A model generated the notes under the pieces. That model was not told the DNA's origin. It saw only the letters and a program-made list of their open reading frames with translations, and made no database searches. From Haliotis rufescens (Eukaryota), in the NCBI RefSeq assembly GCF_023055435.1, contig NW_025964223.1, forward strand, positions 44,206,001 through 44,270,000: a stretch of DNA of 64,000 nt, in the 5' to 3' direction. Below, piece by piece: positions 3,706 through 56,281 of this stretch. Every line of letters starts with the position of its first letter. Within the stretch, counting starts at the first letter, position 1. The position numbers and the translations under genes are program-made.

Positions 3706-3761
3706 TATATAACCCAGTCAGTAATAAGTCTGTGGCATCCGAATTCGAGATTCGTCTGAAG
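3706..3761 (+). promoter_or_regulatory. TATA box (3706-3712) and short non-coding exon 1 (~3737-3761) of peptide gene copy 1
   Basis: TATATAA followed ~50 nt later by a consensus donor AAG|GTAAGT (3762). The next acceptor sits immediately before the ATG at 4314. Conserved in all three units. Confidence 0.7.
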
Positions 3762-4313
3762 GTAAGTGAATCTGTAGATTCTATTCAAGCTCAAACAGTG
3801 TTTTGAACGATTCGTCAAAGATTCTGATGAGTAAATATTCTTTCATGAAATTTTTAATTTTGTATCTATCAATGACCTTAGGGTTAACAGTCTCTGATGC
3901 ATGCAGACCTACAGTAATTGACGTTTACAAATCCCCAGTTTTCAAACGGAATGTCTATATGCTTATTTGTTTTTCTCATCTTTCTCAGCTTCTAAATTAC
4001 CGTGTCTAGCAAAAGTAACTGAAAGGTATTTTATGTAAACCAACTGCCTTGCCTACAGTTTAATAAATGAACGAATGATTGGTTACATAAAACAACATTC
4101 GCGCTGATATTTATGTTTTGGATTCATAACCAGCTCAACAATGAAAAAAGGCTATTTCTCTGTCCATCCTTTCGCCAGCCCAAAGAAAGTACTGTCATAG
4201 TTTTCACAGCACTGTGATTAGGTCCACAGGTTTTCGTGCAATTTGTCTAGGGACTCCCATGTTATTAAATAGTGAATGCTATACATCACCAGATGTTTAC
4301 TTCATTTGACCAG

Positions 4314-7300
4314 ATGAGGCTGCTCGTGGTGTTCCTCCTGATGGCTTTGATTGTTCTCCCAACGGAAGGATTATTCCGTCGTCGTCGCCGCCGCAGATGG
4401 CTTCGTATCAGAGGCGGAAAGGTTCTCACTGGAGTTGGCATTGCTGCCAGACTGGGACTGATAGGAAAAAGAGGTAAGACGACGATTATGTGACGTGCAT
4501 TTGAACAGTGTTTCCTTGAAATGTATGTGGACTCGCATTCTATGAAATTCCTATTGCTATATCAACATACATATTGACAATAGTAGTACATCCTGACTTG
4601 ATAGTATAATTGCAACTTCATTTATTGTTATGAACTACTATTATGAACTACAACTGTATTTGAAAAGAAAATAGGTCGCAATCTACCAACCTGAATTCTC
4701 CCATGGCACTGAAGAATGCTTGATTCTGATTGGACAAAATCAGGTATCTAAATGTATTCGATACCACAGAATTGTCTTGCCTTTTCTCACAGAAACCTTG
4801 CATATGACAACATCGATCTATCGATTGCCTACACATTGATGCACATAACAATGGCTGCCGATAAACAGTTATCGAACTTGTATACGTTCGATATCAGAAG
4901 AACAGCTTACAAGGATATTGAAATAAATTTCAGAACACACACATGTTAAGCAAAACACACCTATAACTATATATATGGATACAGATTCGAAGATAACAGT
5001 GAGCCGTGTCTCCGACTGTCTCGTGTCGTACAATGCTGGCTCGTCTTCAGCTTAAAACGGCGGTAATCAGCCTTATTTCAGGGTGGTTCCATTGGCAATG
5101 AGGATTCGGCCATGTCCATCATTAAAGCATCACGTTATTTGTGAACATTATTACAGATCGAGGTTATCCTCTGGGTACATTTAATTAGTAAATAGCACTG
5201 TCACCAACTTTTGTTGAAGTCATGAACAGCAAAGAGTAAAGGGACATGTAGAAGGTCAATTCAGCCATGTCGAAGTTTGGGGTGAAGAGCTGGTCATTCT
5301 GTTCTGAATATGTATTATTGTTTCTGGCTAGGTATTTCAGCAAACTGGTACATACATACACCTTCAAAATAACTAAGTAGCAGTGTACATAATAACGTAT
5401 TTGAGAAACAGGTCAGCCGGATGGAAGATGTCCTTTTGATTTCCAAAAAAAACCGATTTGGTAGAGTTCAAACAATGCAAAAATGCAACAGGTGAGGTGA
5501 GGTGAATTGGGATTTAACGTCGCGTCCAAGATTATTGCACTTATATAGCGACGTGCATGTACGTGTTTGTGTGTTTGTGTTGCTGCTTGTACTAGTCCGG
5601 ACTGATGCCGATGTATAGTGCTAGCTCACTTAGATACCATGCCGCAGTTTAACATAATTCCCGAGCCGACCAGTCCTTGCTTTAGCCCCTTAATGCCGAG
5701 GACCAGACAGAGTAACAACAGGTACCATCTTTTAACATCTTTTGGTATAACGCTGCCGGGGATCGAACCCCGAACCTTCCGCTCTCCGGGCGGACGCTCT
5801 ACCTCTTGACCACGGACGCGGTGCATATATGCAACAGGTTGCGGCGAAGTTAAATATAAATCTATTGAGGTCTTTTTATCAATTCGTGTGGAATTTTTGT
5901 TACTTTGTAACCATTATTTTGAACTAGTCAAGAATATATAACGCAATCTGTGACTCCTTTTCGGCACGTTCTAAGATAGCTGGCCTGTTGACCCATGACA
6001 CAAGTGCGCGTTCACAAAGAGCACCGTTTTGAAATTGCTCTTGTCGTCTTTGTAGATACAGATATATCTATTGTGTTTTGAAATTAAAATTAAAGGTTTC
6101 TAACTTACAGTTAAGCGACCTCAAATTTTAAAACACATTAGTTTTATCTCCTTACTGTATCTGCATATTTAGTGGTAAGGGTAACTATTCTGCATTTGGA
6201 AAAAGAAATTATAGAATTCACTCTACCAGCATTTATCTCCATTTAATTAATCTTAATCATTGTTTTGAGATTTCAACACAAATTGTACTGCAACAAATTC
6301 CATAAACGACATTCCTTCATACCATTCATACAATGAGGTTTTTTATGTAAACCTGACAACAGGAAAAACATGTTTTATTTATGTGTTTGATGAGACTGTT
6401 AAGGACTAAAAACACATTGATCTGTTAGCGAATGTTTTCATGGAAACTGTCACATATATTTCAGACATACAAAATGACCTTGCCTCTGCTGATCTGAATG
6501 AGGATGGGAACATTGACCAATCAGAAGTGGAGAATCTGTTCGACAAACGCGATGCGGAACAGATCCTGCAAATGGTTGACATGGACGGTAAGAAAAAGAC
6601 AGCAGAAGTATAGTTTTATACATGCCATGTGTGTGATTTCCAATTGTGATTGACGTTAAGAGAAATAAGGACGATTCCTGTTATTCATGACATGACCAGT
6701 ATGTTTCCAGATCACATAGTCGCTATGATAATTGGAATTATTTAAGCATTTGGTAATTCTAATGCTGCCAAGTTATGAGTTGGATTATAATGCTGTCTCT
6801 TTCATTTATTATAATAATAAGGGGGCACGGGTGGCCCAGTCGTCTAAGACGCCGCGATCCTCTGTGCGTCCCTTGGGCACGCCAGAAACCTATGATTGTG
6901 GGTTCGAATCCCGTTTCGCCCCGATAATGTTTCTAGGTTTGTCAACACCATACCCGTGCTCGTGGTTTTCACCGAAGTGATAAACGTCTGAGACCTTCAT
7001 CACTTCAGGCTTTTCTCCCACATTAAGCTGACACGCGGCGATATAACTGGAAACCTATTAAAAGCGTCGTTAAACTAAACTCACTCACTCACTCACTATT
7101 ATAAAAATAATGCAATGTTTCGTCATGATGTGTTTCAGGTGATTCAGTCGTTAGTCACGACGAGTTCATCCGAGGAGTGGAAGACCTTTTCTCTCAGGGT
7201 GGGTGATCGATTATTGATCGTTAATCGAATTTTACTCACACTATTGAAAGTATCGATTTACCTCACTGAGATGAACACTACCGAGCTTACTGTCGCTTAT

Positions 7301-8016
7301 TTCCCGATGAACGTCAGTATGTCGTGTGAATATGAGAGAAACAGAAATAGGGTAATTGGGGAAGGTATCATCACACGGCAATTTCTTTTAGACAGATTGT
7401 GCATGTATGGCGCATCATGATCCGATCACCGAAATGAAACGTCAATTCAAAGTTACAACAGAGAATGCTTTACTTACTAAAAGAAATGACTAAGCTCCAC
7501 ACTGTTTTGTATTGCATCAGGAAATCCAACCGCGCCGCCTCAAGTGGTAATCCCCGTCATCTAGCCTTAGTATGACTCAAACACACACCCGAGGTTCAAC
7601 TTTCATATTGATCCATTTTCAGCATTAACCGGGTCTGGATTTCAATCTAATTCCAACTTTACCTCGTTAATATAGTTCGATTTAAAAAGATTAGTTTGGT
7701 GTTTAAATGTATTGCTTTGTAATGAGTTATGTATATCTAGATTTATGCTGTCTGTCAAAATATGGATCGAAGTTGTATTTGTTGACGTTCATGATCAGCT
7801 GATGAAGACAATGCCTCCATTAGAATATTTATCCTGAAGCCCTTCGCGCATCATGGAATTTGCTCACGTGAGGCACTGTCGTCATAACCTGATGACCGTC
7901 AATAAATACAACTTCAATTCTGAATTATGTGCCATATGTTATTCCGCCCATGATGATTAGTAAGACTTAGGCATCTCTTTATCACGTGTGCATTTTCTGT
8001 TTCAGATGCTGAGTAG
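4314..8016 (+). CDS. Secreted cationic (antimicrobial-like) peptide precursor with C-terminal EF-hand pair, copy 1; coding exons 4314-4473, 6465-6587, 7139-7198, 8006-8016 (117 aa)
   Basis: cag|ATG at 4314. All introns are GT-AG, phase 1, and join in frame: MRLLVVFLLMALIVLPTEG-LFRRRRRRRWLRIRGGKVLTGVGIAARLGLI-GKR-DIQNDLASADLNEDGNIDQSEVENLFDKRDAEQILQMVDMDGDSVVSHDEFIRGVEDLFSQDAE*. EF loops are DLNEDGNIDQSE and DMDGDSVVSHDE. AATAAA at 8076-8081. Confidence 0.88.
5491..5822 (-). mobile_element. tRNA-derived SINE family B (~340 bp, (CACCT)n tail; central region resembles the Meta/MESC-type domain)
   Basis: Reverse tRNA head (GGTAGAGCG...GGTTCGATCCC). Body ggcattaagggg..aaggactggtcggctcgg..gagctagcactata. 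Repeated across the window. Confidence 0.88.
6821..7096 (+). mobile_element. tRNA-derived SINE family A (~275 bp, (CACT)n tail) in intron 3 of peptide gene copy 1
   Basis: A-box TGGCCCAGTCG and B-box GGTTCGAATCC; (CACT)n tail; TSD-like tattataataataa on both sides. Orthologous copies at 15800-16075 and 24497-24763. Confidence 0.9.
7766..7918. mobile_element. ~150 bp imperfect-palindromic MITE-like element in intron 4 (also ~16746-16898 and ~25419-25573)
   Basis: gaagttgtatttgttgacgttcat...gacaatgcctc pairs with gaggcactgtc...atgaccgtcaataaatacaacttc. Confidence 0.6.
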
Positions 8017-9823
8017 ATACTTTCCAACCCAGCGCATTAAGATGATATGATAACGTTATCTTCTTAATGCTTGAAAATAAATAATTGCAGAAAAAAGTCG
8101 CTTTTATGTTTTGTATGTCGGTACATTTAAACTATATAATTATACGTTCCACTCCTATCTCTATGATTTTCCAAATCCAATATGTACTTTCAATTGTTTG
8201 TCGTGTTAGACCAGTACAGGACATGTTTTCAGGACTGCTGATCGACATTTCTCTCAAGAACACTGCTATTTAGAATAAAATAAACATCAATAAAACATTG
8301 ACATATTAACTAGTTGCATGAGTGAGGAAGTGAATTGGTTGATTCCGGAGTCCTATTATGTAAGCCTATGAACAACAGAGTGCAAATTGTAATTCAGGCA
8401 TAAAAGGAAAATCAACTTGCCGATGAGAACTTTATGAGCTTGGTCACGACAAATAAATGTCAGAGGCATGCATTTACCAACAAGCAATGATACTTCACGG
8501 GTTTGTTTCATTGTGTTGCTTAATCGCCCGTGAATACATGTACATTTGGCAGCAATTTTGGTGTGATCTCTATTTTTAACTAACGGTTAGGGAGATGCCA
8601 GGCTCCGGCGAGAGGGAAACATTTCCTGGTGAGGGACATAATCGCCATGTTTCTCGTTTGACGGCGTATGCAACATATTTCATAGCTTCATGGATGTCTG
8701 CTCTACATAGTATCAAGCAATGATAGCAATCGCACAAAATACACCCACGGAGTACGGCTCATCGGACTTTCATGAGTCATAAACGGACTCATCCCAATAC
8801 TTGCAGCTTGCTACTAGTGCGTCGCTACTACATGACATAGAGACCGTACGTTGTCACAGGTGATTGATGATCGTAGTGTCCTTTTCAATACATTTGTTCA
8901 TTTATGGAAATTTAATACATTTAAAGTAGTTGCTATAAATGTGTTTGCAAATCCGAAAAACAATAATAGCAAATTATCGTCTGGAAAGATCTCATGGTTT
9001 CATGTAAATTTTAGTCTGGACACATTTCATGGTTTTATGCAGAATATTCATTAGCTGTGGAGCTTTGGTGGGTAACAAACGCTACATGTTTGAAAATTAT
9101 TCGAGATTGTTTCTATGGGAACACAAGAAATTAAAAAAATGACGTTGCGTTCCAGATAATTGCACGTATATATCGACGCGCATGCACGTGTGTGTGTGGC
9201 TGCTTTTCCTAGTCTGGACAAATGCCGATTTTATATTGCTTGTTTTAAGCCCTTTAATGCCGAGCGCCAGACAGGATAACAACAAGTACCATATTTTAAC
9301 GTATTTTGGCATGACACATGACAATGAAGTTATTGCTCGGAAAATGATGTGCACTTCGACGCCAACGCCAACGCCAACGCCACCCGAGCCAACCCCTTTG
9401 TGGGGTTACACAATTCTGAACGCTCAACATCTTTCTGTACTATCAAATGCAGTGAATACTCATGTCGAGGTCGTGGACACGTAAAAAGATGGGAATTGTG
9501 TTGTCCTAAAATAAAGAATTCCTACCGTAAAGTTGGTAAATGTGAATCATGAACATGAAATTCACTGCGAATTTCGAGATTACAAATAGTTAGAAATGTG
9601 TAAGACGAGATAAATTCCTTTCCATACAGAGGTATACTGTGTAATATCTGATAATAATAAATATATAATTAATATAATACTTGGTTTTAAGTGCTATAAA
9701 TCACATTGCACCCTCTATATCTTAAACTGTTTTCGGTACCAATTCTTAATTATATATTTTACAGTAAAATAAAGACGTTGTTCTCCACAAATTCTGTCTA
9801 CTTTGTCATCCGTCAACTTCTAA

Positions 9824-10700
9824 GAAATGCCTATCAAACAATTCATTCGTTTATACGGCGTGGTATGGGCCGAATTAATCTCACAATGACAATTTCGGGG
9901 TGTCTTGCCTACTCGAAGCGCCTGACCTAATTCGGCTAACGTAGCGATAGACCTTTAACGTGGGCGTTCACGTCTCCAGATCATGTCCAAGACGTGTTCT
10001 GTAGGGGGAAAAGGTCAGGACTCATGGCTGGCCATTGCATGGTGATGTTTTGCGGCTGGAGGAAGCCAGTTACGATACGTGCCCGTTTGGGCAAGAGCGT
10101 TATCGTCTTGTAAAACAAAATGTGGACCAGTATAGAGGGCAAACGGCACAACTATTGGTGCACGTATGTTGTCTCGGTTGTTCTGTCCAGGGACCCGTCC
10201 TGGGACAATATGTAATGGCGTCCTGACATATCATGAAAGACAAAAAAACCCAACCTTTTGCGTTCGCGTGATTTCGTTAGTCCACGTCTATCCTGAAGGT
10301 CCGGAGTGAATCTGGACTGATCTGAAAGCATGACAAGAGACATTACATTAATTGAACTCTAAGATCATTGGCGTATGGTTGGACTGTGTCTATTTGTTAA
10401 TGCAGGTACAGGCGGTCGCGGAATAAGCAATTAATATAAGTAGACGATTTCTAACTCTTGTGGTCTGGCGCAAGTAAATTTGATTGGATGTTTCGGGTCA
10501 ATTTTTTAACGATCATGGACTTATGTTGTTGACCAAGGGCCCATGTGCAGGGCAGAGCATTGACATTTTGTCTGCAAAAACCTGTTCCAAAGTCATCAAA
10601 TCACAGACTAAGACCCATTGAACAATGTGGCTACCTCTCGCTGAGTTCTACCAGTTTCAGTAGCACCCAGGCGTCCATCACGTTGTAGACGACGCATGTG
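9824..10700 (-). pseudogene. Decayed Tc1/mariner transposase (unit 2 copy)
   Basis: Reverse strand reads MLSDQSRF (ORF 10152-10343) and MQWPAMSPDL...EHVLD (~9980-10040), hallmark Tc1 DDE motifs; frameshifted. Confidence 0.8.
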
Positions 10701-12432
10701 CATTCCCAATCTGATCAAAAATACTGCATTACAATAAGAGTATATGACTAACTTTTTACTGCCGATTTAACAAATCTAATAATGCTAATTGCTCAGGACG
10801 ACGTGATAACCTTCAACTGTAGTGTCAAAATCAAGTTGACCCCCTGCTAGTGCACGGATGAATTGCTTGGTCTAATTGCAATGTCTCTGCTGTACACGAT
10901 TGTGTTGGGGCATTAAGTTTTGGTTTTGGCAGTCCCTTTTTAAAGCTGAGCTTTCTTTGAGACCGACTATACCATTTATATTTCATGATCGCATAGTTTT
11001 GTGGTAGTGTATATTTCCTGACACGTCTGCGGCAAATAGATAGAGGAAGGACGCTACCAGGTTTTGTGTTCTTTCTTGGTTTAAACATCACATCACAGTG
11101 TAGCCTTGATTCTATTCCTTATGGACCTAACACGCTAAATTACACATTTGAATATTGTGGTAAGGGCATTTTGTGGCCTATCATTGTACATATTATCATT
11201 TAAATATGTCTACCGACAATGACAAGAAATACTTTTCTGAAAACATTAGCTTTCGCGGTGTTCCTGCTGTTTCTATAAGAGGGGATTTATGGTGATTTTA
11301 TACATCTGACTGACAAATCAAACTCGAGTATTTTCCGAATACTTGGAAGAATTTTGTTTTAACAACATAAAACTAGAGGAACAGATGTTTACAATGGAGG
11401 TATGTCAAATAATCCAAAGTTCTGAACACAAGACAATGTTAAAAATTTATAAAACCCTCTTTCAAGAATAAAATAAAGAAACTCAGCACTTTTTAATAAT
11501 CTTGACTCTCCTGAACGCAGACTGATTACGAGCTATAACATGTTAATGTAATTGCATTGCGAATAGTGTCATCGTGTATAATACTGTGACCAATCGGCTA
11601 AGTCTATGTAATGATGGTTTTACCAATGAGTTTTAAACGTTCATATTAATAAACGGGACTGGTAGAGGTAAATATAAATTGAAGGGAGAAAACATTGTTT
11701 TGCCGGCACAAACACATTACTCCGTCGTATTTATATATATATCAGCAGCAGCTAGACCTTTGAATATATGCATATCAAATTAGAAATACGAATTAGAAAT
11801 TCCACAATATACAACCCCAGCTTTGCTATTGAATTGGTCATGTGACAGACAATCTGAGGTGATAGATCAGTGAACAGATACCTTATATCCTGGTGGACGT
11901 ATGAAGGTGTGACTCGGAGTGAATCATAAAGTCCCCTGTCGACACCTAACACACCTCTGACAGGATGTAGTTGGACGTGATTTATTTGCTGACGACAAAA
12001 CGTGGCTATGTCTGAAGTTGTCACTGGTTAGTGTGACTGTTGCCATTATTACTTGTCATATACATGTATGTTTTTCAAGTAATTGGATAATTGATTCCCT
12101 AAAATACATCTGGATATTTCATGGTTGATATTTGAGCCTTGACAGATTAGGCATTTCACACAAATTTTGTTTAATAATGAATTTGTTGTCTACAGATAAT
12201 GAGTTATTTATGGAAAGGAAACATGAAAATGATAAATACTCGAGTACATGTAATGAAGAGTACATTATAAATACATGACCATAAATAACTTATCCTAATT
12301 GATAGTTCTATAATTGTATCAATTATACAGTGCTGATTAATCACATATTGGGGTGTCTGATGTGGAGGTGAATATATTATTCATCGTTTATCACATCAAA
12401 CACCTCAGCTGTGATCGTGATCTTCTACCTTC

Positions 12433-12488
12433 TATATAACCCAGTCAGTAATAAGTCTGTGGCATCCGAATTCGAGATTCGCCTGAAG
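12433..12488 (+). promoter_or_regulatory. TATA box and non-coding exon 1 of peptide gene copy 2
   Basis: TATATAA 12433-12439; AAG|GTAAGT donor at 12489. Confidence 0.7.
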
Positions 12489-13050
12489 GTAAGTGAATCT
12501 GTAGATTCTATTCAAGCTCAAACAGTGTTTTGAACGATTCGTCAAAGATTCTGATGAGTAAATATTCTTTAATGAAATGTTTAATTTTGTATCTATCAAT
12601 GGCCTTAGGGTTAACAGTGTCTGGTTCAGACCTACAGTAACTGACGTATACAAATCCCCAGTTTTCAAACGGAATGTCTATATGCTTATTTGTTTTTCTC
12701 ATCTTTCTCTGCTTCTAAATTACCGTGTCTAGCAAAAGTAACTGAAAGGAATTTCATTTAAACCAATTCGCTTGCCTACAGTTAAATAAATGAACGAATG
12801 ATTGGTTACATAAAACAACATTCGCGCTGATATTTATGTTTTGGATTCATAACCAGCTCAACAATGAAAAGAGGCTATTTCTCTGTCCATCCTTTCGCCA
12901 GCCCAAAGAAAGTACTGTCATAGTTTTCACAGCACTGTGATTAGTGTTCCAAATATAGATCCATAGGTTTTCGTGCAATTTGTCTAGGGACTCCCATGTT
13001 ATTAAATAGTGAATGCTATACATCACCAGATGTTTACTTCATTTGACCAG

Positions 13051-16000: not shown

Positions 16001-16995
16001 ATTAAGCTGACACGCGGCGATATAACTGGAAACCTATTAAAAGCGTCGTTAAACCAAACTCACTCACTCACTCACTATTATAATAATAATGCAATGTTTC
16101 GTCATGATGTGTTTCAGGTGATTCAGTCGTTAATCACGACGAGTTCATCCGAGGAGTGGAAGACCTTTTCTCTCAGGGTGGGTGATCGATTATTGATCGT
16201 TAATCGAATGTTACTCACACTATTGACAGTATCGGTTTACCTCACTCAGATGAACACTACCGAGCTTACTGTCGCTTATTTCCCGATGAACGTCAGTATG
16301 TCGTGTGAATATGAGAGAAACAGAAATAGGGTAATTAGGGAAGGTATCATCACACGGCAATTCCTTTTAGACAGATTGTGCATGTATGGCGCATCATGAT
16401 CCGATCACCGAAATGAAACGTCAATTCAAAGTTACAACAGAGAATGCTTTACCTACTAAAAGAAATGACTAAGCTCCACACTGTTTTGTATTGCATCAGG
16501 GAATCCAACCGCGCCGCCTCAAGTGGTAATCCCCGTCATCTAGCCTTAGTATGACTCAAACACACACCCGAGGTTCAACGTTCATATTGATCCATTTTCA
16601 GCATCAACCGGGTCTGGATTTCAATCTAATTCCAACTTTACCTCGTTAATATAGTTCGATTTAAAAAGATTAGTTTGGTGTTTAAATGTATTGCTTTGTA
16701 ATGAGTTATGTATATCTAGATTTATGCTGTCTGTCAAAATATGGATCGAAGTTGTATTTGTTGACGTTCATGATCAGCTGATGAAGACAATGCCTCCATT
16801 AGAATATTTATCCTGAAGCCCTTCGCGCATCATGGAATTTGCTCACGTGAGGCACTGTCGTCATCATCTGATGACCGTCAATAAATACAACTTCAATTCT
16901 GAATTATGTGCCATATGATATTCCGCCCATGATGATTAGTAAGACTTAGGCATCTCTTTATCACGTGTGCATTTTCTGTTTCAGATGCTGAGTAG
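13051..16995 (+). CDS. Cationic peptide/EF-hand precursor, copy 2; coding exons 13051-13210, 15443-15565, 16118-16177, 16985-16995
   Basis: Same splice sites and frame as copy 1. Protein differs only by S->T (LATAD) and S->N (VVNHDE). AATAAA at 17055-17060. Confidence 0.88.
14185..14820 (-). mobile_element. SINE family B (unit 2 copy, interrupted by a family A SINE)
   Basis: Orthologous to 5491-5822. Confidence 0.88.
14315..14593 (-). mobile_element. SINE family A inserted into a family B SINE, unit 2 only
   Basis: Full length; TSD ctagctcactgag at 14302-14314 and 14594-14606; empty site in units 1 and 3. Confidence 0.93.
15800..16075 (+). mobile_element. SINE family A (unit 2 copy)
   Basis: Duplicate of 6821-7096 with TSD tattataataataa. 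Confidence 0.9.
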
Positions 16996-18808
16996 ATACT
17001 TTCCAACCCAGCGCATTAAGATGATATGATAACGTTATCTTCTTAATGCTTGAAAATAAATAATTGCAGAAAAAAGTCGCTTTTATGTTTTGTATGTCGG
17101 TACATTTAAACTATATAATTATACGTTCCACTCCTATCTCTATGATTTTCCAAATCCAATATGTACTTTCAATTGTTTGTCGTGTTAGACCAGTACAGGA
17201 CATGTTTTCAGGACTGCTGATCGACATTTCTCTCAAGAACACTGCTATTTAGAATAAAATAAACATCAATAAAACATTGACATATTAACTAGTTGCATGA
17301 GTGAGGAAGTGAATTGGTTGATTCCGGAGTCCTATTATGTAAGCCCATGAACAACAGAGTGCAAATTGTAATTCAGGCATAAAAGGAAAATCAACTTGCC
17401 GATGTGAACTTTATGAGCTTGGTCACGACAAATAAATGTCAGAGGCATGCATTTACCAACAAGCAATGATACTTCACGGGTTTGTTTCATTGTGTTGCTT
17501 AATCGCCCGTGAATACATGTACATTTGGCAGCAATTTTGGTGTGATCTCTATTTTTAACTAACGGTTAAGGAGATGCGAGGCTCCGGCGAGAGGGAAACA
17601 TTTCCTGGTGAGGGACATAATCGCCATGTTTCTCGTTTGACGGCGTATGCAACATATTTTATAGCTTCATGGATGTCTGCTCTACATATTATCAAGCAAT
17701 GATAGCAATCGCACAAAATACACCCACGGAGTACGGCTCATCGGACTTTCATGAGTCATAAACGGACTCACCTCAATACTTGCAGCTTGCTACTAGTGCG
17801 TCACTACCACATGCCATAGAGACCGTACGTTGTCACAGGTGATTGATGATCGTAGTGTCCTTTTCAATACATTTGTTCATTTATGGAAATTTAATACATT
17901 TAAAGTAGTTGCTATAAATGTGTTTGCAAATCCGAAAAACAATAATAGCAAATTATCGTCTGGAAAGATCTCATGGTTTCATGTAAATTTTAGTCTGGAC
18001 ACATTTCATGGTTTTATGCAGAATATTCATTAGCTGTGGAGCTTTGGTGGGTAACAAACGCTACATGTTTGAAAATTATTCGAGATTGTTTCTATGGGAA
18101 CACAAGAAATAAAAAAAATGACGTTGCGTTCCAGATAATTGCACGTATATATCGACGCGCATGCACGTGTGTGTGTGGCTGCTTTTCCTAGTCTGGACAA
18201 ATGCCGATTTTATATTGCTTGTTTTAAGCCCTTTAATGCCGAGCGCCAGACAGGATAACAACAAGTACCATATTTTAACGTATTTTGGCATGACACATGA
18301 CATTGAAGTTATTGCTCGGAAAATGATGTGCACTTCGACGCCAACGCCAACGCCAACGCCAACGCCAACCGAGCCAACCCCTTTGTGGGGTTACAAAATT
18401 CTGAACGCTCAACATCTTTCTGTACTATCAAATGCAGTGAATACTCATGTCGAGGTCGTGGACACGTAAAATGATGGGAATTGTGTTGTCCTAAAATAAA
18501 GAATTCCTACCGTAAAGTTGGTAAATGTGAATCATGAACATGAAATTCACTGCGAATTTCGAGATTACAAATAGTTAGAAATGTGTAAGACGAGATAAAT
18601 TCCTTTCCATACAGAGGTATACTGTGTAATATCTGATAATAATAAATATATAATTAATATAATACTTGGTTTTAAGTGCTATAAATTACATTGCACCCTC
18701 TATATCTTAAACTGGTTTCGGTACCAATTCTTAATTATATATTTTACAGTAAAATAAAGACGTTGTTCTCCACAAATTCTGTCTACTTTGTCATCCGTCA
18801 ACTTCTAA

Positions 18809-19685
18809 GAAATGCCTATCAAACAATTCATTCGTTTATACGGCGTGGTATGGGCCGAATTAATCTCACAATGACAATTTCGGGGTGTCTTGCCTACTCG
18901 AAGCGCCTGACCTAATTCGGCTAACGTAGCGATAGACCTTTAACGTGGGCGTTCACGTCTCCAGATCATGTCCAAGATGTGTTCTGTAGGGGGAAAAGGT
19001 CAGGACTCATGGCTGGCCATTGCATGGTGATGTTTTGCGGCTGGAGGAAGCCAGTTACGATACGTGCCCGTTGGGCAAGAGCGTTATCGTCTTGTAAAAC
19101 AAAATGTGGACCAGTATAGAGGGCAAACGGCACAACTATTGGTGCACGTATGTTGTCTCGGTTGTTCTGTCCAGGGACCCGTCCTGGGACAATATGTAAT
19201 GGCGTCCTGACATATCATGAAAGACAAAAAAACCCAACCTTTTGCGTTCGCGTGATTTCGTTCGTCCACGTCTATCCTGAAGGTCCGGAGTGAATCTGGA
19301 CTGATCTGAAAGCATGACACGAGACATTACATTAATTGAACTCTAAGATCATTGGCGTATGGTTGGACTGTGTCTATTTGTTAATGCAGGTACAGGCGGT
19401 CGCGGAATAAGCAATTAATATAAGTAGACGATTTCTAACTCTTGTGGTCTGGCGCAAGTAAATTTGATTGGATGTTTCGGGTCAATTTTTTAACGATCAT
19501 GGACTTGTGTTGTTGACCAAGGGCCCATGTGCAGGGCCGAGCATTGACATTTTGTCTGCAAAAACCTGTTCCAAAGTCTGCAAATCACAGACTAAGACCC
19601 ATTGAACAATGTGGCTACCTCTCGCTGAGTTCTACCAGTTTCAGTAGCACCCAGGCGTCCATCACGTTGTAGACGACGCAAGTGC
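18809..19685 (-). pseudogene. Decayed Tc1/mariner transposase (unit 3 copy)
   Basis: Near-identical to the unit 2 copy (RVMLSDQSRF, QWPAMSPDL). Confidence 0.8.
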
Positions 19686-21413
19686 ATTCCCAATCTGATC
19701 AAAAATACTGCATTACAATAAGAGTATATGACTAACTTTTTACTGCCGATTTAACAAATCTAATAATGCTAATTGCTCAGGACGACGTGATAACCTTCAA
19801 CTGTAGTGTCAAAATCAAGTTGACCCCCTGCTAGTGCACGGATGAATTGCTTGGTCTAATTGCAATGTCTCTGCTGTACACGATTGTGTTGGGGCATTAA
19901 GTTTTGGTTTTGGCAGTCCCTTTTTAAAGCTGAGCTTTCTTTGAGACCGACTATACCATTTATATTTCATGATCGCATAGTTTTGTGGTAGTGTATATTT
20001 CCTGACACGTCTGCGGCAAATAGATAGAGGAAGGACGCTAACAGGTTTTGTGTTCTTTCTTGGTTTAAACATAACATCACAGTGTAGCCTGATTCTATTC
20101 CTTATGGACCTAACACGCTAAATTACACATTTGAATATTGTGGTAAGGGCATTTTGTGGCCTATCATTGTACATATTATCATTTACATATGTCTACCGAC
20201 AATGACAAGAAATACTTTTCTGAGACATTAGCTTCCGCGGTGTTCCTGCTGTTTCTATAAGAGGGGATTTATGGTGATTTTATACATCTGACTGACAAAT
20301 CAAACTCGAGTATTTTCCAAATTCTTGGAAGAATTTTGTTTTAACTACATAAAACTAGAGGAACAGATGTTTACAATGGAGGTATGTCAAATAATCCAAA
20401 GTTCTGAACACAGGACAATGTTAAAAAATTATAAAACCCTCTTTCAAGAATAAAATAAAGAAACTCAGCACTTTTTAATAATCTTGACTCTCTTGAACGC
20501 AGACTGATTACGAGCTATAACATGTTAATGTAGTTGCATTGCGAATAGTGTCATCGTGTATAATACAATGACCAATCGGCTAAGTCTATGTAATGATGGT
20601 TTTACCAACGAGTTTTAAACGTTCATATTAATAAACGGGACTGGTAGAGGTAAATATAAATTGAAGGGAGAAAACATTGTTTTGCCGGCACAAACACATT
20701 ACTCCGTCGTATTTATATATATATCAGCAGCAGCTAGACCTTTGAATATATGCATTCAAATTAGAAATACAAATTAGAAATTTCACAATATACAACCCCA
20801 GCTTTGCTATTGAATTGGTCATGTGACAGACAATCTGAGGTGATAGATCAGTGAACAGATACCTTATATCCTGGTGGACGTATGAAGGTGTGACTCGGAG
20901 TGAATCATAAAGTCCCCTGTCGACACCTAACACACCTCTGACAGGATGTAGTAGGACGTGATTGATGTGCTGACGACAAAACGTGGCTATGTCTGAAGTT
21001 GTCACTGGTTAGTGTAACTGTTGCCATTATTACTTGTCATATACATGTATGTTTTTCAAGGAATTGGATAATTGATTCCCTAAAATACATCTGGATATTT
21101 CATGGTTGATATTTGAGCCTTGACAGATTAGGCATTTCACACAAATTTTGTTTAATAATGTATTTGTTGTCTACAGATAATGTGTTATTTATGGAAAGTA
21201 AACATGAAAATGATAAATACTCGAGTACATGTAATGAAGAGTACATTATAAATACATGACCATAAATAACTGATCCTAATTGATAGTTCTATAATTGTAT
21301 CAATTATACAGTGCTGATTAATCACATATTGGGGTGTCTGATGTGGAGGTGAATATATTATTCATCGTTTATCACATCAAACACCTCAGCTGTGATAGTC
21401 ATCTTCTACCTTC

Positions 21414-21469
21414 TATATAACCCAGTCAGTAATGAGTCTGTGGCATCCGAATTCGAGATTCCCCTGAAG
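21414..21469 (+). promoter_or_regulatory. TATA box and non-coding exon 1 of peptide gene copy 3
   Basis: TATATAA 21414-21420; AAG|GTAAGT donor at 21470. Confidence 0.7.
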
Positions 21470-22030
21470 GTAAGTGAATCTGTAGATTCTATTCAAGCTC
21501 AAACAGTGTTTTGAACGATTCGTCAAAGATTCTGATGAGTAAATATTCTTTCATGAAATTTTTAATTTTGTGTCTATCAATGGCCTTGGGGTTAACAGTG
21601 TCTGATTCAGACCTACAGTAATTGACGTATACAAGTCCCCATTTTTCAAACGGAATGTCTATATGCTTATTTGTTTTTCTCATCTTTCTCTGCTTCTTAA
21701 TTACCGTGTCTAGCAAAAGTAACTGAAAGGAATTTCATTTAAACCAATTCACTTGCCTACAGTTAAATAAATGAACGAATGATTGGTTACATAAAAAAAC
21801 ATTCGCGCTGATATTTATGTTTTGGATTCATAACCAGCTCAACAATGAAAAGAGGCTATTTTTCTGTCCATCCTTTCGCCAGCCCAAAGAAAGTGCTGTC
21901 ATAGTTTTCACAACACTGTGATTAGTGTTCCAATGCAGATCCACAGGTTTTCGTGCAATTTGTCTAGGGACTCCCATGTTATTAAATAGTGAATGCTATA
22001 CATCACCAGATGTTTACTTCATTTGACCAG

Positions 22031-25000
22031 ATGAGGCTGCTCGTGGTGTTCCTCCTGATGGCTTTGATTGTTCTCCCAACGGAAGGATTATTCCGTCGTC
22101 GTCGCCGCCGCAGATGGCTCCGTATCAGAGGCGGAAAGGTTCTCACTGGAGTTGGCATTGCTGCCAGACTGGGACTGATAGGAAAGAGAGGTAAGACGAC
22201 GAATATGTGACGTGCATTTGAACAGTGTTTCCTTAGAATTTATGTGGACTCGCATTCTATGAAATTCCTATTGCTATATCAACATACATATTGACAATAG
22301 TAGTACATCCTGACTTGATAGGATAATTGCAACCTCATTTATTGTTATGAACTACTATTATGAACTACAACTGTATTTGAAAAGAAAATAGGTCGCAATC
22401 TACCAACCATGGCACTGAAAAATGCTTGATTCTGATTGGACAAAATCAGGTATCTAATTGTATTCGATACCTCAGAATTGTCTTGCCTTTTCACGCAGAA
22501 ACCTTGCATATGACAACATCGATCTATCGATTGCCTACACATTGATGCACATAACAATGGCTGCCGATAAAGAATTATCGAACTTGTATACGTTCGATAT
22601 CAGAAGAACAGCTTACAAAACATGATGAAATAAATTTCAGAAAACACACTTGTTAAGCAAAACACACAAACCACAATATATGTCAGGGATACAGAATCGG
22701 AGATAAAAGTAAGCAGTCTCTCCGACGGTCTTGGTCGTACAATACTGGCTCGTCTTCAGCTTAAAACGGCGGTTATCAGCTTTATTTCAGGGTGGTTCCA
22801 ATGGCAATGAGGTTTCGGCCATATCCATCGTTAAAGCATCACGTTAATTGTGAACACTATTAAAGGTCCTCTGGGTTCATGTAATTAGTAAATAGAACTG
22901 TCACCAACTATTGTTGAAGTCATGAACAGTAAAGAGTAAAGGTAGAATGTCAATTCAGCCATGTCGAAGTTTGGGGTGAAGAGTTAGTCATTCTGTTCTA
23001 AATGTGTATTATTGATTTCGGGTAGGTATTTCAGCAAACTGGTACATAGGTACACCTTCAAAATAGTTTTCGTGTAGTTTAATAACGTATATGAGAAACA
23101 GGTCAGCCAGATGGAAGATGTCCTTTTGATTTCCAAAAAACGCAAACAATGCAAATATGCAACAGGTGAGGTGAGGTGAATTGGGATTTAACGTCACGTC
23201 CAAGATTATTGCACTTATATAACGACGTGCATGTACGTGTATGCTGCTTGTACTAGTCCGGACTGATGCCGATTTATAGTGCTAGCTCACTGAGATACCA
23301 TGCCGCAGTTTAACATGAATACCCGACTCAGACACAGTATACTGACTTCGAGCCGACCAGTCCTTGCTTTATCCCCTTAATGCCGAGGACCAGACAGGGG
23401 AACAACAAGTACCATCTTTTAACATCTTTTGGTATGACGCGGCCTGGGATCGAACCCCGAACCTTCCGCTCTCCGGGCGGACGCTCTACCACTAGATCAC
23501 GGACGCGGTGCAAATATGCAACAGGTTGCGGCGAAGTTAAATATATATCTTTGGAGGTCTTTTAATCAATTCATGTGAAATTGTTGTTACTTTGTAACCA
23601 TTATTTTGAACTAGTCAAGAATATATAACGCAACCTATGACTCCTTTTTGGCACGTTCTAAGACAGCTGGCCTGTTGACCCATGACACAAGTGTGCATTC
23701 ACAAAGAGCACCGTTTTGAAATTGCTCTTGTCGTCTTGGAAGATTCAGATATACCTATTGTGTTTTGAAATTAAAATTAAAGGTTTGTAATCTACAGTTA
23801 AACTACCTCAAATTTTAAAACACATTAGTTTTATCTCCTAACTGTATCTGCATATTTAGTGGTAAGGGTTACTATTCTGCATTTGGAAAAAGAAATAGAA
23901 TTCACTTTACCAGCATGTATCTTAAATATCTGTATCATTGTTTTGAGATTTCAACACAAATTGTACTGCAACAAATTCCATAAACGACATTCCTTCATAC
24001 CATTCATGCAATGAGTTTTTTATGTAATCCCGAGAACAGGAAAACATGTGTTATTTATGTGTTTGATGAGACTGTTAAGGACTAAAAACACATTGATCTG
24101 TTAGCGAATGTTCTCATGGAAACTGTCACATATATTCCAGATATACAAAATGACCTTGCCACTGTTGATCTGAATGAGGATGGGAACATTGACCAATCAG
24201 AAGTTGAGAACCTATTCGACAAACGCGATGCGGAACAAATCCTGCAAATGGTTGACATGGACGGTAAGTACAAAGACAGCAGAGGTATAGTTTATACATG
24301 CCATGTGTATGATTTCCAATTGTGATTGACGTAAAGAGAAATAAGGACGATTCCTGTTATCATGACATGACCAGTATGTATCCAGATCACATAGTCGCCA
24401 TGACAATTGTAATCATTTAAGCTTTTGGTTATTCTAAAGCTGCAAAGTTATGAGTTGGATTATAAGGCTGGTCTCTTTCATTTATTATAATAATAAGAGG
24501 GCACGGGTGGCCAAGTCGTCTAAGGCGCCGCGATCAGCTGTGCGTCCCTTGGGCACGCCAGAAACCTATGATTGTGGGTTCGAATCCCGTTTCGCCCCGA
24601 TTATGTTTCTAGGTTTGTCAACAACATACCCGTGCTCGTGCGTTTAACCGAAGTGGTAAACGTCTGAGACCTGCATCAGTTCAGGCTTTCCTCCCACGTT
24701 AAGCTGACACGCCGCGATATTACTGGAAAACTGTTAAAAGCGGCGTTAAACCAAACTCACTCATAATAACGCGATGTTTCGTCATGATGTGTTTCAGGTG
24801 ATTCAGTCGTTAGTCACGATGAGTTCATCCGAGGAGTGGAAGACCTTTTCTCTCAGGGTGGGTGATCAATAATTGATCGTTAATCGAATGCAACTCACAA
24901 TATTGACAGTATCGGTTTATCTCACTCAGATGAACACTACCATGCTAACTCTCACTCATTTCCCGATGAACGTCAGTATGTCGTGTGAATATGAGAGAAA

Positions 25001-25672
25001 CAGAAATAGGGTAATTAGGGAAGGTATCATCACACGGCAATTCCTTTTAGACAGATTGTGCATGTATGGCGCGTCACCGAAATGAAATTTCCATTCGAAG
25101 TTATAACAGAGAATGCTCTACTTACTAAAAGAAATGACTAAGCTCCACACTGTTTTGTATTGCATCAGGAAATCCAACCGCGCCGCCTCAAGTGGTAATC
25201 CCCGTCATCTAGCCTTAGTATGACTCAAACACACACCCGGGGATCACATAACTTTCATATTAATCTATTTTCAGCATCAACCGGGTCTGGATTTCAATCC
25301 AATTCCAACTTTACCTCGTTAATATATTTCGATTTTTAAAAGATTAGTTTTGAGTTTAAATGTATTGCTTTGTAATGAATTATGTATATATAGATTTATG
25401 CTGTCTTTCAAAATAAGGATCGAAGTTGTATTTGTTGACTTTCATCAGTACTGTTGATGAAGACAGTGCCTCCATGAAAATATTTATCCTGAAGCCCTTC
25501 GCGCATCATGGAATTTGCTCACGTGAGGCACTGTCGTTATCACTTGATGACCATCAATAAATACAACTTCAATTCTGAATTATGTGCCATATGTTATTCC
25601 TCCCATGATGATTAGTAAGACTTAGGCATCTCTTTATCACGTGTGCTTTTTTTGGTTTCAGATGCTGAGTAG
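22031..25672 (+). CDS. Cationic peptide/EF-hand precursor, copy 3; coding exons 22031-22190, 24141-24263, 24798-24857, 25662-25672
   Basis: Same splice sites and frame (LATVD variant). The acceptor, GAT-GCT-GAG-TAG and AATAAA (25719-25724) are conserved although the flanking 3' UTR has diverged. Confidence 0.88.
23165..23509 (-). mobile_element. SINE family B (unit 3 copy)
   Basis: Orthologous to 5491-5822. Confidence 0.88.
24497..24763 (+). mobile_element. SINE family A (unit 3 copy)
   Basis: Orthologous to 6821-7096. Confidence 0.9.
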
Positions 25673-25770
25673 ATACCTTCAAAACAAGGCATTAAGATGA
25701 TGTAATATGATGCTTGAAAATAAAAAATAGCAGAGCAAAGTCGTTTGTATTTGTATGTCCGTACATTTAA

Positions 25771-46677: not shown

Positions 46678-47067
46678 GTGAATGAGTGAGTTGGGTTTAA
46701 CGTCGCTTTTAACAGTATTCCAGCTATATCGCGGCGTGTCAGCTTATTGAGGGAGGAAAGTCCGAAGTGATGCGGGTTTCAGGCGTTTACCACTTCGGTG
46801 AAACCCACGAGCACAGGTATGGTGNNNNNNNNNNNNNNNNNNNNNNNNNNNNNNNNNNNNNNNNNNNNNNNNNNNNNNNNNNNNNNNNNNNNNNNNNNNN
46901 NNNNNNNNNNNNNNNNNNNNNNNNNNNNNNNNNNNNNNNNNNNNNNNNNNNNNNATCGGGGCGAACCGGGATTCGAACCCACAATCATAGGTTTCTGGCG
47001 TGCCCAAGGGACGCAACTCTGCACAGCGAATCGCGGCGCCTTAGACGACTAGGCCACCCGTGCCCCC
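46678..47067 (-). mobile_element. SINE family A spanning the assembly gap
   Basis: Both halves flank the N run; TSD ttctcatcatcagag on both sides. Confidence 0.88.
46825..46954. other. Assembly gap (130 N)
   Basis: Run of N. Confidence 1.
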
Positions 47068-56112: not shown

Positions 56113-56281
56113 GACAGCCCTGTAAATAATTGAGTTTGGCAAACAACGTGTAGAGCAACGAGACACGACTGTGGGATACAATGACACAGTTCTATGACAA
56201 TTCGATCCTTTTTGAGGTCGGTCCTGCGAGGACTATTGAGAACAGGTGATCTTGGGTCCATAGGGATCACTCTTCATCGGA

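What the first reader, a model, noticed from the sequence alone, without database searches (positions are those of the whole stretch)
3706..25724. Triplicated gene for a candidate new antimicrobial/cytolytic peptide with an EF-hand pro-domain
Seen: hand-splicing gives a 117-aa precursor in three intact copies. It has a 19-aa signal peptide (..PTEG|), a 31-aa Cys-free peptide LFRRRRRRRWLRIRGGKVLTGVGIAARLGLI (10 Arg + 1 Lys, no acidic residues, hydrophobic Gly-rich C-half), GKR, and a 64-aa propiece (20 D/E versus 3 K/R) holding two EF-hand loops. Established: G-K-R is the prohormone convertase plus PAM amidation signal. A cationic peptide with an anionic C-terminal propiece is the layout of linear AMPs such as mussel myticalins and fish piscidins/pleurocidins. 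An EF-hand extension is known in mussel mytimycin, but that mature peptide is Cys-rich. Inference: a linear amidated poly-Arg peptide coupled to an EF-hand pair is a combination I do not recognise as a described family. The propiece may neutralise the peptide and release it in a Ca2+-dependent way. Automated annotation would likely label it only an EF-hand protein.
Basis: partly seen in the sequence, partly recalled or inferred. Interest (0 to 1): 0.92.

Follow-up and report, generated by a model that had tools for sequence, protein, structure and literature searches.

The report
Abalone cationic peptide / EF-hand gene family
The three tandem genes are real, intact red abalone (Haliotis rufescens) genes from an undescribed, apparently abalone-only family of about 50-60 genes; each encodes a secreted Arg-rich peptide with an amidation signal joined to an acidic calcium-binding (EF-hand) domain, most likely a new host-defence peptide family, though its activity and expression are untested.

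Summary
Observation confirmed. All four splice junctions are AG/GT. The three hand-spliced 117-aa products are letter-for-letter RefSeq models of Haliotis rufescens (XP_048240013.1, XP_048239978.1, XP_048239979.1), all named "uncharacterized protein".

The triplication is part of a larger family. There are 4 more copies just upstream, plus clusters on six other contigs. That gives about 58 EF-hand-exon and 49 signal/peptide-exon matches in this genome.

In 5.8 and 1.8 billion-protein libraries every named relative is from Haliotis (rufescens, cracherodii, rubra, asinina); three unnamed fragments have no stated origin. All members share one layout:
- a conserved signal peptide;
- a variable, almost always Cys-free peptide of 24-44 aa, charge +7 to +18;
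- a near-invariant G-K-R;
- an acidic EF-hand pair with conserved Ca ligands, charge -9 to -22.

Exon layout matches mussel myticalins. An EF-hand propiece is otherwise known only from Cys-rich mytimycins. I found no paper describing this family.

Best reading (about 0.55): precursors of amidated, membrane-active host-defence peptides kept neutral by a Ca-binding propiece.

First readers of this scan flagged sister clusters of this family on other DNA of this genome. Class: new variant of a known kind. Interest 0.6.

The parts
784..25770 (+). Tandem array of three gene units (about 8.7-9 kb each)
   Evidence: Self-megablast: 784-8130 vs 18498-25770 92.2%, 784-5630 vs 9513-14311 93.1%, 5662-14314 vs 14661-23294 97.8%, 14594-17109 vs 23282-25770 90.5%
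3704..3711 (+). TATA box of copy A (same motif in the corresponding stretches of copies B and C printed from 12417 and 21398)
   Evidence: CTATATAA conserved in all three copies
3706..3761 (+). Copy A exon 1, 5'UTR only (5' end approximate, probably near 3735)
   Evidence: Donor AAG|GTAAGT at 3761/3762; the same junction is used in RefSeq isoforms P0021 and P0002
4314..4370 (+). Copy A signal peptide, residues 1-19 (ATG is the first base of exon 2)
   Evidence: Hydrophobic core with T at -3 and G at -1. No non-synonymous change in any compared pair of six cluster copies
4371..4463 (+). Copy A cationic peptide, residues 20-50 (+11, Cys-free; Arg block 22-28, W29, Gly/Ala hydrophobic tail 37-50 with G40xxxA44xxxG48)
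   Evidence: Identical in all three copies
4464..4473 (+). G-K-R (amidation donor plus dibasic cleavage site) and the first base of codon 54; end of exon 2, phase-1 donor
   Evidence: R53 invariant, G51 and K52 in at least 90% of 34 family members
6465..6587 (+). Copy A exon 3: entering helix, EF-hand loop 1 (6491-6526, residues 63-74), linker, start of loop 2 (6578-6587)
   Evidence: D63, D67, G68, D71, E74 invariant
7139..7198 (+). Copy A exon 4: rest of EF-hand loop 2 (7139-7164, to residue 103) and exiting helix
   Evidence: (EF-hand_1 at residues 84-109)
8006..8016 (+). Copy A exon 5 coding part (D-A-E, stop TAG at 8014-8016); AATAAA at 8076-8081
12433..12488 (+). Copy B exon 1 (5'UTR)
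13051..13210 (+). Copy B exon 2 (signal, peptide, GKR)
15443..15565 (+). Copy B exon 3 (EF-hand 1)
16118..16177 (+). Copy B exon 4 (EF-hand 2)
16985..16995 (+). Copy B exon 5 coding part with stop; AATAAA at 17055
   Evidence: Product = P0016 = XP_048239978.1
21414..21469 (+). Copy C exon 1 (5'UTR)
22031..22190 (+). Copy C exon 2 (signal, peptide, GKR)
24141..24263 (+). Copy C exon 3 (EF-hand 1)
24798..24857 (+). Copy C exon 4 (EF-hand 2)
25662..25672 (+). Copy C exon 5 coding part with stop; AATAAA at 25719-25724
   Evidence: Product = P0020 = XP_048239979.1

Best explanation
The three genes belong to a family of about 50-60 secreted precursors found so far only in Haliotis.

Shown:
- Each precursor has a conserved signal peptide, a highly variable Arg/Trp-rich peptide that is Cys-free in all but one member, a near-invariant Gly-Lys-Arg, and an acidic domain that is a single EF-hand pair with intact Ca ligands.

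Inferred from established processing rules:
- After signal cleavage a proprotein convertase cuts after K-R.
- A carboxypeptidase removes K-R.
- Peptidylglycine amidating monooxygenase turns the Gly into a C-terminal amide.
- For the window genes this releases an amidated cationic peptide: a 31-mer, or a 22-mer starting at W29 if the Arg run is also cut.

Inferred from composition and family pattern:
- The peptide is a membrane-active host-defence (antimicrobial or cytolytic) effector.
- The Ca-loaded acidic EF-hand propiece neutralises and chaperones it inside the secretory pathway until cleavage.
For: - Gene models are exact RefSeq proteins.
- Purifying selection acts on all parts: pN/pS 0 to 0.84 (at most 0.57 in 23 of the 25 computable values), and no non-synonymous change in the signal peptide in any compared pair of six cluster copies.
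- Family size and common layout.
- Among 11 subfamily representatives, mean identity is signal 0.57, peptide 0.31, GKR 0.88, EF pair 0.57. Conserved prepro parts with a variable mature peptide are typical of AMP families, as described for myticalins (PMC5577615).
- The conserved Gly before K-R argues that the peptide's C-terminus, and hence the peptide itself, is the selected product.
- Peptides carry +7 to +18. None of the 35 tabulated contains Cys except P0049.
- Paralogue peptides form strongly amphipathic helices, muH up to 0.89.
- Peptide and propiece charges compensate: r = -0.70 over 53 distinct precursors, net pro-protein charge -3.2 +/- 2.6.
- EF-hand pair: Pfam EF-hand_1 scores 25.7 bits against a cut-off of 25.4. 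A PDB profile hit to the CaBP1 C-lobe has E 6e-6. The AlphaFold2 (AF2) propiece has pLDDT 70-77 with two helix-loop-helix units. Foldseek and VIA-align return only EF-hand proteins, Z 6.5-8.4.
- Exon layout is that of myticalin genes: UTR-only exon 1, ATG at the start of exon 2, a phase-1 intron just after the dibasic site.
- Mytimycin is a precedent for an EF-hand propiece after a dibasic site.
Against:
- Within the window's subfamily the peptide is conserved from H. asinina to H. rufescens with pN/pS below 1. I saw no sign of the diversifying selection often found in immune effectors.
- The window peptide is not an amphipathic helix (muH 0.04-0.12).
- The many internal R-R and R-x-R-R sites could be cut by the same convertases, so the mature form is unknown.
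- Conserved Ca ligands show that the propiece is more than a charge spacer; it could itself be the functional product.
- No NF-kB-type site lies near the promoters (this is weak evidence).
- The charge correlation is not corrected for relatedness and rests on about five subfamilies.
Confidence: 0.55

Rival explanations
1. Secreted calcium-binding proteins in which the EF-hand domain is the working part, for example in biomineralisation, extrapallial fluid or mucus, or as Ca buffers. The basic N-terminal stretch would be a sorting, mineral- or polyanion-binding, or pro segment rather than a defence peptide.
For: - The Ca-ligand residues of both loops are the most conserved positions of the family.
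- The EF pair is more conserved than the peptide.
- Abalone do secrete small EF-hand proteins linked to shell formation (Hdh-SMP5, PMC10741955).
- RefSeq names some members 'calcium-binding protein 5-like'.
- Proteins with a basic block next to an acidic block are common among shell matrix proteins (my own knowledge).
Against: - The near-invariant Gly in G-K-R only makes sense if the upstream peptide is released and amidated.
- Hdh-SMP5 has a different layout: a 16-aa signal, EF loops at 36-48, 56-68 and 112-124, rich in D, S and V with no Arg-rich peptide. It did not appear among the profile hits.
- About 50 paralogues that vary mainly in the basic peptide are not expected for a Ca buffer.
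Confidence: 0.15
2. Precursors of regulatory peptides (neuropeptides, hormones or pheromones). An amidated peptide would act on a receptor, and the EF-hand part would be a granule-packaging domain.
For: - Signal peptide plus G-K-R is the standard neuropeptide amidation layout (established).
- The window subfamily's peptide is well conserved across four species under purifying selection.
Against: - About 50-60 paralogues carry very different peptides.
- Charges of +7 to +18 and Arg runs of 5-10 are atypical for receptor ligands and would be shredded at dibasic sites.
- Neuropeptide precursors with a folded EF-hand domain are not known to me.
- No relatives were found outside Haliotis, whereas neuropeptide families are usually ancient.
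Confidence: 0.1
3. Another lineage-specific secreted function that uses a polycation/polyanion pair, such as gamete or reproductive-tract proteins, adhesive or mucus components, or an anti-predator or antifouling toxin. The two oppositely charged halves would act together, for instance in dense packaging like the lysin/FITZAP system.
For: - The family is seen only in Haliotis and is tandemly amplified.
- The two halves compensate in charge.
- Abalone are known to package polycationic sperm proteins with an anionic partner (PMC6952181).
Against: - FITZAP/sp6 itself is different: anionic, with a poly-Asp N-terminus, two exons and no EF-hand.
- Nothing links these genes to gonad.
- GKR amidation points to a free peptide.
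Confidence: 0.15

Closest known systems
Myticalins (and modiocalins) of mussels, linear cationic AMPs (PMC5577615)
   Same: - Signal peptide, Cys-free Arg-rich peptide of 23-42 aa, a Gly before the basic cleavage site that predicts amidation, and an anionic C-terminal extension.
- A multigene family with conserved signal and extension and a hypervariable peptide.
- Gene layout: exon 1 is 5'UTR only, the ATG sits at the start of exon 2, exon 2 ends just after the dibasic site, and the intron there is phase 1.
   Different: - No detectable sequence similarity (no myticalin among hits).
- The myticalin extension is described as unstructured, whereas here it is a folded EF-hand pair split over three more exons (5 exons against 3).
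- The peptides here are not Pro-rich.
- Gastropod, not bivalve.
- Myticalins have measured activity and gill expression; these have neither.
Mytimycins of Mytilida (PMC8004829)
   Same: Signal peptide, mature peptide, dibasic site, then an anionic C-terminal extension containing an EF-hand whose role is unknown.
   Different: - The mytimycin mature peptide is 54 aa with 12 Cys and is antifungal. Here the peptide is linear and Cys-free in all but one of the 35 precursors tabulated.
- Mytimycin is reported with one EF-hand motif in a 75-aa extension; here there is a canonical pair in 44-80 aa.
- No sequence match was found.
Charge-neutralised AMP precursors in general (defensin, piscidin/pleurocidin, cathelicidin-type logic)
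   Same: A cationic product is paired with an anionic pro-segment of matching charge. Here r = -0.70 and the net charge is near zero.
   Different: In those families the pro-segment is not a Ca-binding domain. The comparison rests on my own knowledge of those families, not on a test here.
Calmodulin lobe bound to basic amphipathic peptides (melittin, mastoparan, MLCK M13)
   Same: One EF-hand pair lobe (best PDB relatives are CaBP1 and calmodulin lobes) encoded next to a basic, Trp-anchored hydrophobic peptide. This would be a sensor-target pair in one chain.
   Different: Binding was not shown: AF2 gives no confident docking and the complex test gave no verdict. The protein is secreted, not cytosolic, and the inter-EF linker is 8 residues shorter.
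Hdh-SMP5, secreted EF-hand shell matrix protein of H. discus hannai (PMC10741955)
   Same: A small secreted acidic EF-hand protein of abalone, 134 aa.
   Different: It has no Arg-rich peptide and no GKR. Its EF loops begin at residue 36 and its composition differs. It was not retrieved by the family profile.

Membership tests
EF-hand pair (Pfam clan EF_hand: PF00036, PF13499) | Two canonical 12-residue Ca loops (positions 1, 3, 5, 12 acidic or amide; Gly or small at 6; hydrophobic at 8) | tested here: met
   Loop 1, residues 63-74, fits D-x-N-x-D-G-x-I-D-x-x-E. Loop 2, residues 92-103, fits D-x-D-x-D-S-x-V-S-x-x-E. D63, D67, G68, D71 and E74 are invariant; N65, I70, D92, G95, D96 and E103 are at least 90% conserved in 34 sequences.
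EF-hand pair (Pfam clan EF_hand: PF00036, PF13499) | Score above Pfam gathering cut-off | tested here: inconclusive
   EF-hand_1 scores 25.7 bits against a cut-off of 25.4, just passing. EF-hand_7 (pair) scores 22 against 30, and EF-hand_5 24.8 against 25.9. A family profile against PDB gives the CaBP1 C-lobe at E 6e-6.
EF-hand pair (Pfam clan EF_hand: PF00036, PF13499) | Helix-loop-helix x2 fold with paired short strands | tested here: met
   AF2 on 34 sequences gives pLDDT 70-77 over residues 61-110, with helices 72-78, 81-91 and 101-115 and strands at 69-70 and 99-100. All top Foldseek rows are EF-hand lobes, prob 0.95-1.0 but E only 0.03 or worse. VIA-align Z is 6.5-8.4, rmsd 2-3 A over 60-75 residues. 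Confidence is moderate.
EF-hand pair (Pfam clan EF_hand: PF00036, PF13499) | Binds Ca2+ | not testable with these tools
   Needs ITC, 45Ca overlay or NMR on recombinant propiece.
Myticalins | Precursor made of signal peptide, Cys-free cationic peptide, Gly + dibasic site, and anionic extension | tested here: met
   Searches compared with PMC5577615.
Myticalins | Gene layout: UTR-only exon 1, ATG at the start of exon 2, phase-1 intron after the dibasic site, three exons | tested here: inconclusive
   The first three points are met in the window genes. They are met in five paralogue clusters with the intron shifted by 0-5 codons. The gene has five exons, not three.
Myticalins | Sequence similarity of signal peptide and extension to Mytilus myticalins | tested here: not met
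   No named hit outside Haliotis down to E 1e-3. Above that come only generic EF-hand proteins. The word-based search could miss very distant kin.
Myticalins | Measured antimicrobial activity; gill/mucosal expression | not testable with these tools
Mytimycins | Mature peptide with 12 conserved Cys | tested here: not met
   The peptide has 0 Cys in all but one of the 35 precursors tabulated; P0049 has 2.
Mytimycins | EF-hand-bearing anionic extension after a dibasic site | tested here: met
   PMC8004829.
Amidated neuropeptide precursors | Signal peptide and a Gly-dibasic motif after the peptide | tested here: met
   G-K-R is near-invariant.
Amidated neuropeptide precursors | Low copy number, peptide conserved across phyla or classes, neuronal expression | tested here: not met
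   There are about 50-60 loci and named hits are from Haliotis only. Expression was not testable.
FITZAP / sp6 abalone sperm protein | Anionic peptide with an N-terminal poly-Asp run, two exons | tested here: not met
   PMC6952181 compared.
Hdh-SMP5 shell matrix protein | 16-aa signal, EF loops at 36-48, 56-68 and 112-124, rich in D, S and V, no basic peptide | tested here: not met
   PMC10741955 compared. The sequence itself could not be fetched for alignment.

The most novel reading that the evidence does not exclude
The EF-hand pair is a built-in, calmodulin-lobe-like inhibitor. While Ca-loaded in the secretory pathway, it would clamp the Trp-anchored basic/hydrophobic peptide of its own chain, and it would co-evolve with that peptide across about 50 paralogues. 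That would make this a secreted 'sensor-target in cis' safety catch for cytolytic peptides, a mechanism not described for any antimicrobial peptide family. It could also explain the unexplained EF-hand of mytimycins.
Probability: 0.2. Interest if true: 0.8.

Novelty: new variant of a known kind. Interest (0 to 1): 0.6.

Why it matters
Few gene-encoded antimicrobial peptides are known from abalone. A 2025 review lists molluscidin, macins, and fragments derived from hemocyanin and LGBP (PMC11767717). None of these is a large dedicated gene family.

If these roughly 50-60 genes encode defence peptides, they would be the main peptide arsenal of an aquaculture and conservation genus troubled by vibriosis and withering syndrome. 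They would also be a natural library of more than 50 Arg/Trp-rich amidated peptides to test.

A folded, Ca-binding propiece conserved next to variable peptides makes one question directly testable: what do EF-hand extensions do in AMP precursors? The mytimycin authors state that the role of theirs is unknown.

The finding also shows how automated annotation hides such families behind 'uncharacterized protein'.

Tried and rejected
- Joined sequence. I searched the spliced model exon by exon, by reference. I never typed the joined sequence into a search tool. Joining was done only inside scripts for translation and comparison. Whole-protein searches used the database ids P0019, P0016 and P0020, which listing of cluster members returned.
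- Complex prediction, propiece 54-117 + 2 Ca + peptide 20-50: no verdict, score 0.02 against a mark of 0.34, controls not run. This is not evidence either way.
- AF2 on the shallow 20-sequence alignment: pLDDT 50, unusable. Neither AF2 model docks the peptide on the EF pair with confidence.
- FITZAP/sp6: rejected. Hdh-SMP5: rejected.
- Paper searches for the six LOC numbers, for three short family motifs, and for abalone AMP / EF-hand / Arg-rich terms found no description. Subscription journals are not covered.
- ESM Atlas look-alikes: best score 0.80, generic EF-hand clusters, a lead only.
- P0014 (1106 aa, repetitive) matched only 15 residues of the query in its best-scoring stretch (14 stretches in all, all on a repeat unit) and looks spurious.
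- NF-kB-type motif scan: 3 hits, none near the promoters and no more than chance.
- Diversifying selection inside the C445 cluster: not seen, pN/pS below 1 everywhere. The numbers are small.
- Homology of the propiece to the mytimycin extension could not be tested directly, because no mytimycin sequence was available by reference.

Full report
**What is there**

The window is Haliotis rufescens chromosome-scale contig C445, 44,206,001-44,270,000.

- A 5'UTR exon ends at 3761 with the donor AAG|GTAAGT.
- The ATG is the first base of exon 2 (4314-4473).
- Exon 3 is 6465-6587, exon 4 is 7139-7198, and a last exon begins at 8006 with its stop at 8014-8016.
- All acceptors are AG and all donors GT. 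The introns after exons 2, 3 and 4 are all phase 1.
- The product is 117 aa: a 19-aa signal, a 31-aa Cys-free peptide with 10 Arg and 1 Lys, G-K-R, and a 64-aa tail with 20 D/E and 3 K/R.

Two further intact copies lie at 12433-16995 and 21414-25672. They sit inside a tandem array, 784-25770, whose units are 90.5-97.8% identical. Each copy keeps a CTATATAA box, the exon 1 donor, and an AATAAA about 60 nt after the stop.

The three proteins differ at three propiece positions only. Each pair shows 6-8 synonymous versus 2 non-synonymous codon changes.

**Independent support for the model**

I searched exon by exon, by reference, and never typed the joined sequence into a search tool.
- The exon 2 open frame found 117-aa RefSeq proteins in H. 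cracherodii, H. rufescens, H. rubra and H. asinina.
- A cluster look-up returned three H. rufescens entries: XP_048240013.1, XP_048239978.1 and XP_048239979.1 (LOC124139999, LOC125373139, LOC124140000).
- These are letter-for-letter my copies A, B and C.
- They are Gnomon models named "uncharacterized protein". A sister copy is named "calcium-binding protein 5-like".

The only transcript-like record is a 502-bp ENA contig that encodes an entire 141-aa paralogue, which is possible only without introns (P0030).

**The triplication is a small part of a big family**

Six-frame searches of the whole assembly gave the following:
- With exon 2 and exon 3 as queries: four more copies 15-50 kb upstream on the same contig, and diverged clusters on C379, C585, C146 and at C445:38.79-38.82 Mb. 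In each case a signal/peptide exon is followed about 1 kb later by an EF-hand exon.
- With a family profile: 121 exon matches at E <= 0.01. I count about 58 EF-hand exons and about 49 signal/peptide exons, on C445, C379, C585, C146, C46, C51 and C179. The tool states these are lower bounds.

RefSeq proteins for the paralogues all share one plan:
- a signal peptide of the MRLFLVLLLVAL type;
- 1-2 residues, then an Arg run of 3-10 and a Trp;
- a variable basic stretch;
- a hydrophobic end followed by G-K-R (G-R in two members);
- an acidic domain with two EF-hand loops.

In five hand-checked paralogues the intron next to GKR is again phase 1, shifted by 0-5 codons.

In the 5.8-billion-protein and 1.8-billion-representative libraries every named relative is from Haliotis. 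The only other family hits are three unnamed fragments (P0029, P0030, P0051) of unstated origin. Beyond those come only generic EF-hand proteins at E above 1e-3.

**Properties of the parts**

Over 53 distinct precursors:
- The peptide is 24-44 aa with charge +7 to +18. In the 35 precursors where I tabulated Cys, it is Cys-free in all but one.
- The propiece is 56-80 aa in these full-length members, down to 44 aa in one truncated model. Its charge runs from -9 to -22.
- The two charges co-vary (r = -0.70), leaving a nearly neutral pro-protein at -3.2 +/- 2.6. This correlation is not corrected for relatedness.

Among 11 subfamily representatives, mean identity is 0.57 for the signal, 0.31 for the peptide, 0.88 for GKR and 0.57 for the EF pair. 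The invariant columns of a 34-sequence alignment are R53 and the Ca-ligand or loop residues D63, D67, G68, D71 and E74, plus E76. G51, K52, N65, I70, D92, G95, D96 and E103 are at least 90% conserved.

Within the window's own cluster all regions are under purifying selection, with no non-synonymous change in the signal peptide in any compared pair of six copies. The peptide is well conserved from H. asinina to H. rufescens.

The window peptide is a "block" molecule. An Arg head (residues 20-36) is followed by a Gly/Ala-rich hydrophobic tail with a G40xxxA44xxxG48 small-residue pattern. Its helical moment is only 0.04-0.12. The C379/C585-type peptides, by contrast, are strongly amphipathic helices with muH up to 0.89.

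**The propiece is a genuine EF-hand pair**

- Pfam EF-hand_1 just passes its cut-off (25.7 against 25.4 bits). The pair model does not (22 against 30).
- The family profile hits the CaBP1 C-lobe in PDB at E 6e-6, aligned over residues 49-108 with an 8-residue shorter inter-EF linker.
- AF2 on the 34-sequence alignment gives pLDDT 70-77 for residues 61-110, with two helix-loop-helix units and two short strands.
- Foldseek returns only EF-hand lobes, with prob 0.95-1.0 but E 0.03 or worse.
- VIA-align gives Z 6.5-8.4, rmsd 2-3 A over 60-75 residues. That is in a range the tool warns is only moderately specific, but it agrees with the sequence motifs.
- One listed neighbour is MCFD2, which to my knowledge is a luminal secretory-pathway protein; if so, EF-hand pairs do work in that compartment.

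**How it most likely works**

Shown: the architecture, its conservation, and the Ca-competent loops.

Inferred from established processing enzymology:
- Signal cleavage comes first.
- A convertase then cuts after K-R.
- A carboxypeptidase trims the K-R.
- Amidation uses the conserved Gly.

The conservation of that Gly is my main argument that the upstream peptide is a selected end product, because cleavage alone would need only K-R.

Inferred from composition and family pattern: an Arg/Trp-rich amidated peptide acting on membranes as a host-defence effector, with the acidic propiece neutralising it in transit. The conserved EF ligands say the propiece does more than carry charge. A Ca-dependent hold on the peptide, like a calmodulin lobe on melittin or M13, is attractive but unsupported. 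AF2 shows no confident docking, and the complex test gave no verdict (listed only under Tried and rejected). Seawater holds about 10 mM Ca (my own knowledge), so extracellular Ca cannot be the release trigger. Release would follow cleavage and dilution. The true N-terminus (residue 20 or 29) cannot be predicted, because the Arg run is itself a convertase site.

**Comparison with what is known**

- Closest in logic and gene layout are the mussel myticalins. They have a UTR-only exon 1, the ATG at the start of exon 2, a phase-1 intron after the dibasic site, a Gly that predicts amidation, an anionic extension, a conserved signal, and a hypervariable Cys-free Arg-rich peptide (PMC5577615). There is no detectable sequence similarity, and the extension here is a folded domain.
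- The only described AMP with an EF-hand extension is mytimycin, whose mature part has 12 Cys. Its authors state that the role of the EF-hand is unknown (PMC8004829).
- FITZAP/sp6 and Hdh-SMP5 were considered and rejected.
- A 2025 review of aquatic invertebrate AMPs lists no such abalone family.
- No paper holds the LOC numbers or the family motifs.

I class it as a new variant of a known kind: a linear amidated cationic peptide family with an EF-hand-pair propiece, seen so far only in Haliotis.

**Earlier notes of this scan**

After my own genome searches, the findings index showed that first-stage readers had flagged sister clusters of the same family in other windows of this genome. These notes are unverified. 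They agree, and add one cluster about 39 Mb upstream that I did not check.

**Verdict**

- Observation: confirmed.
- Interpretation: partly supported. The architecture and novelty hold, while function, processing and expression are untested.
- Interest: 0.6. This is a sizeable undescribed candidate immune-effector family in an economically important genus, with an unusual and testable propiece, but the evidence so far is purely from sequence.

Noticed in passing
window 42928-44198: Long C-rich satellite built on TCACTCAC-type units (periods 12 and 64, about 16-100 copies). It gives GC skew -0.67 in the 42-44 kb bin and creates spurious long ORFs on the + strand.
   Followed up: partly
window 55312-56116: Tandem repeat with nested periods of 22, 33 and 99 bp (about 7-36 copies, 74-85% matches).
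   Followed up: no
window 38422-38705: A 73-bp unit repeated 3.9 times at 99% identity.
   Followed up: no
window 5490-5825, 23164-23512, 39049-39400 (-), 40870-41217 (-): Dispersed repeat of about 350 bp, 80-92% identical between copies. It lies in intron 2 of gene copies A and C and twice downstream, and looks like a tRNA-derived SINE. ARAGORN calls a tRNA-Ser(GGA)-like sequence at 14748-14819 (-) in intron 2 of copy B.
   Followed up: partly
window 36182-37315 (-) and 47839-48327 (-): Two long open frames (377 and 162 aa) rich in Asn/Asp/Ser, with many Tyr-x-x-(Val/Ile/Leu)-like motifs and no Pfam match. They may be large exons of an unrelated minus-strand gene.
   Followed up: partly
window 46825-46954: Run of 130 N (assembly gap or masked). 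I left it untouched.
   Followed up: no
G000:C445:44156047-44191396 (15-50 kb upstream of the window): Four further copies of the same subfamily (RefSeq LOC124140002, LOC124140075, LOC124140001, and a 'calcium-binding protein 5-like'). Their peptides differ at 5-8 positions from the window's.
   Followed up: yes
P0049 (H. rubra LOC124256960): A family member whose cationic peptide holds two Cys and ends in N-G-R rather than G-K-R. It is a possible disulfide-looped variant.
   Followed up: no
P0051 (JGI metagenome contig, 956 bp): An EF-hand exon of this family, preceded by G-K-R, occurs on a short contig of an environmental metagenome. It presumably comes from abalone or a related gastropod in the sample.
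   Followed up: no
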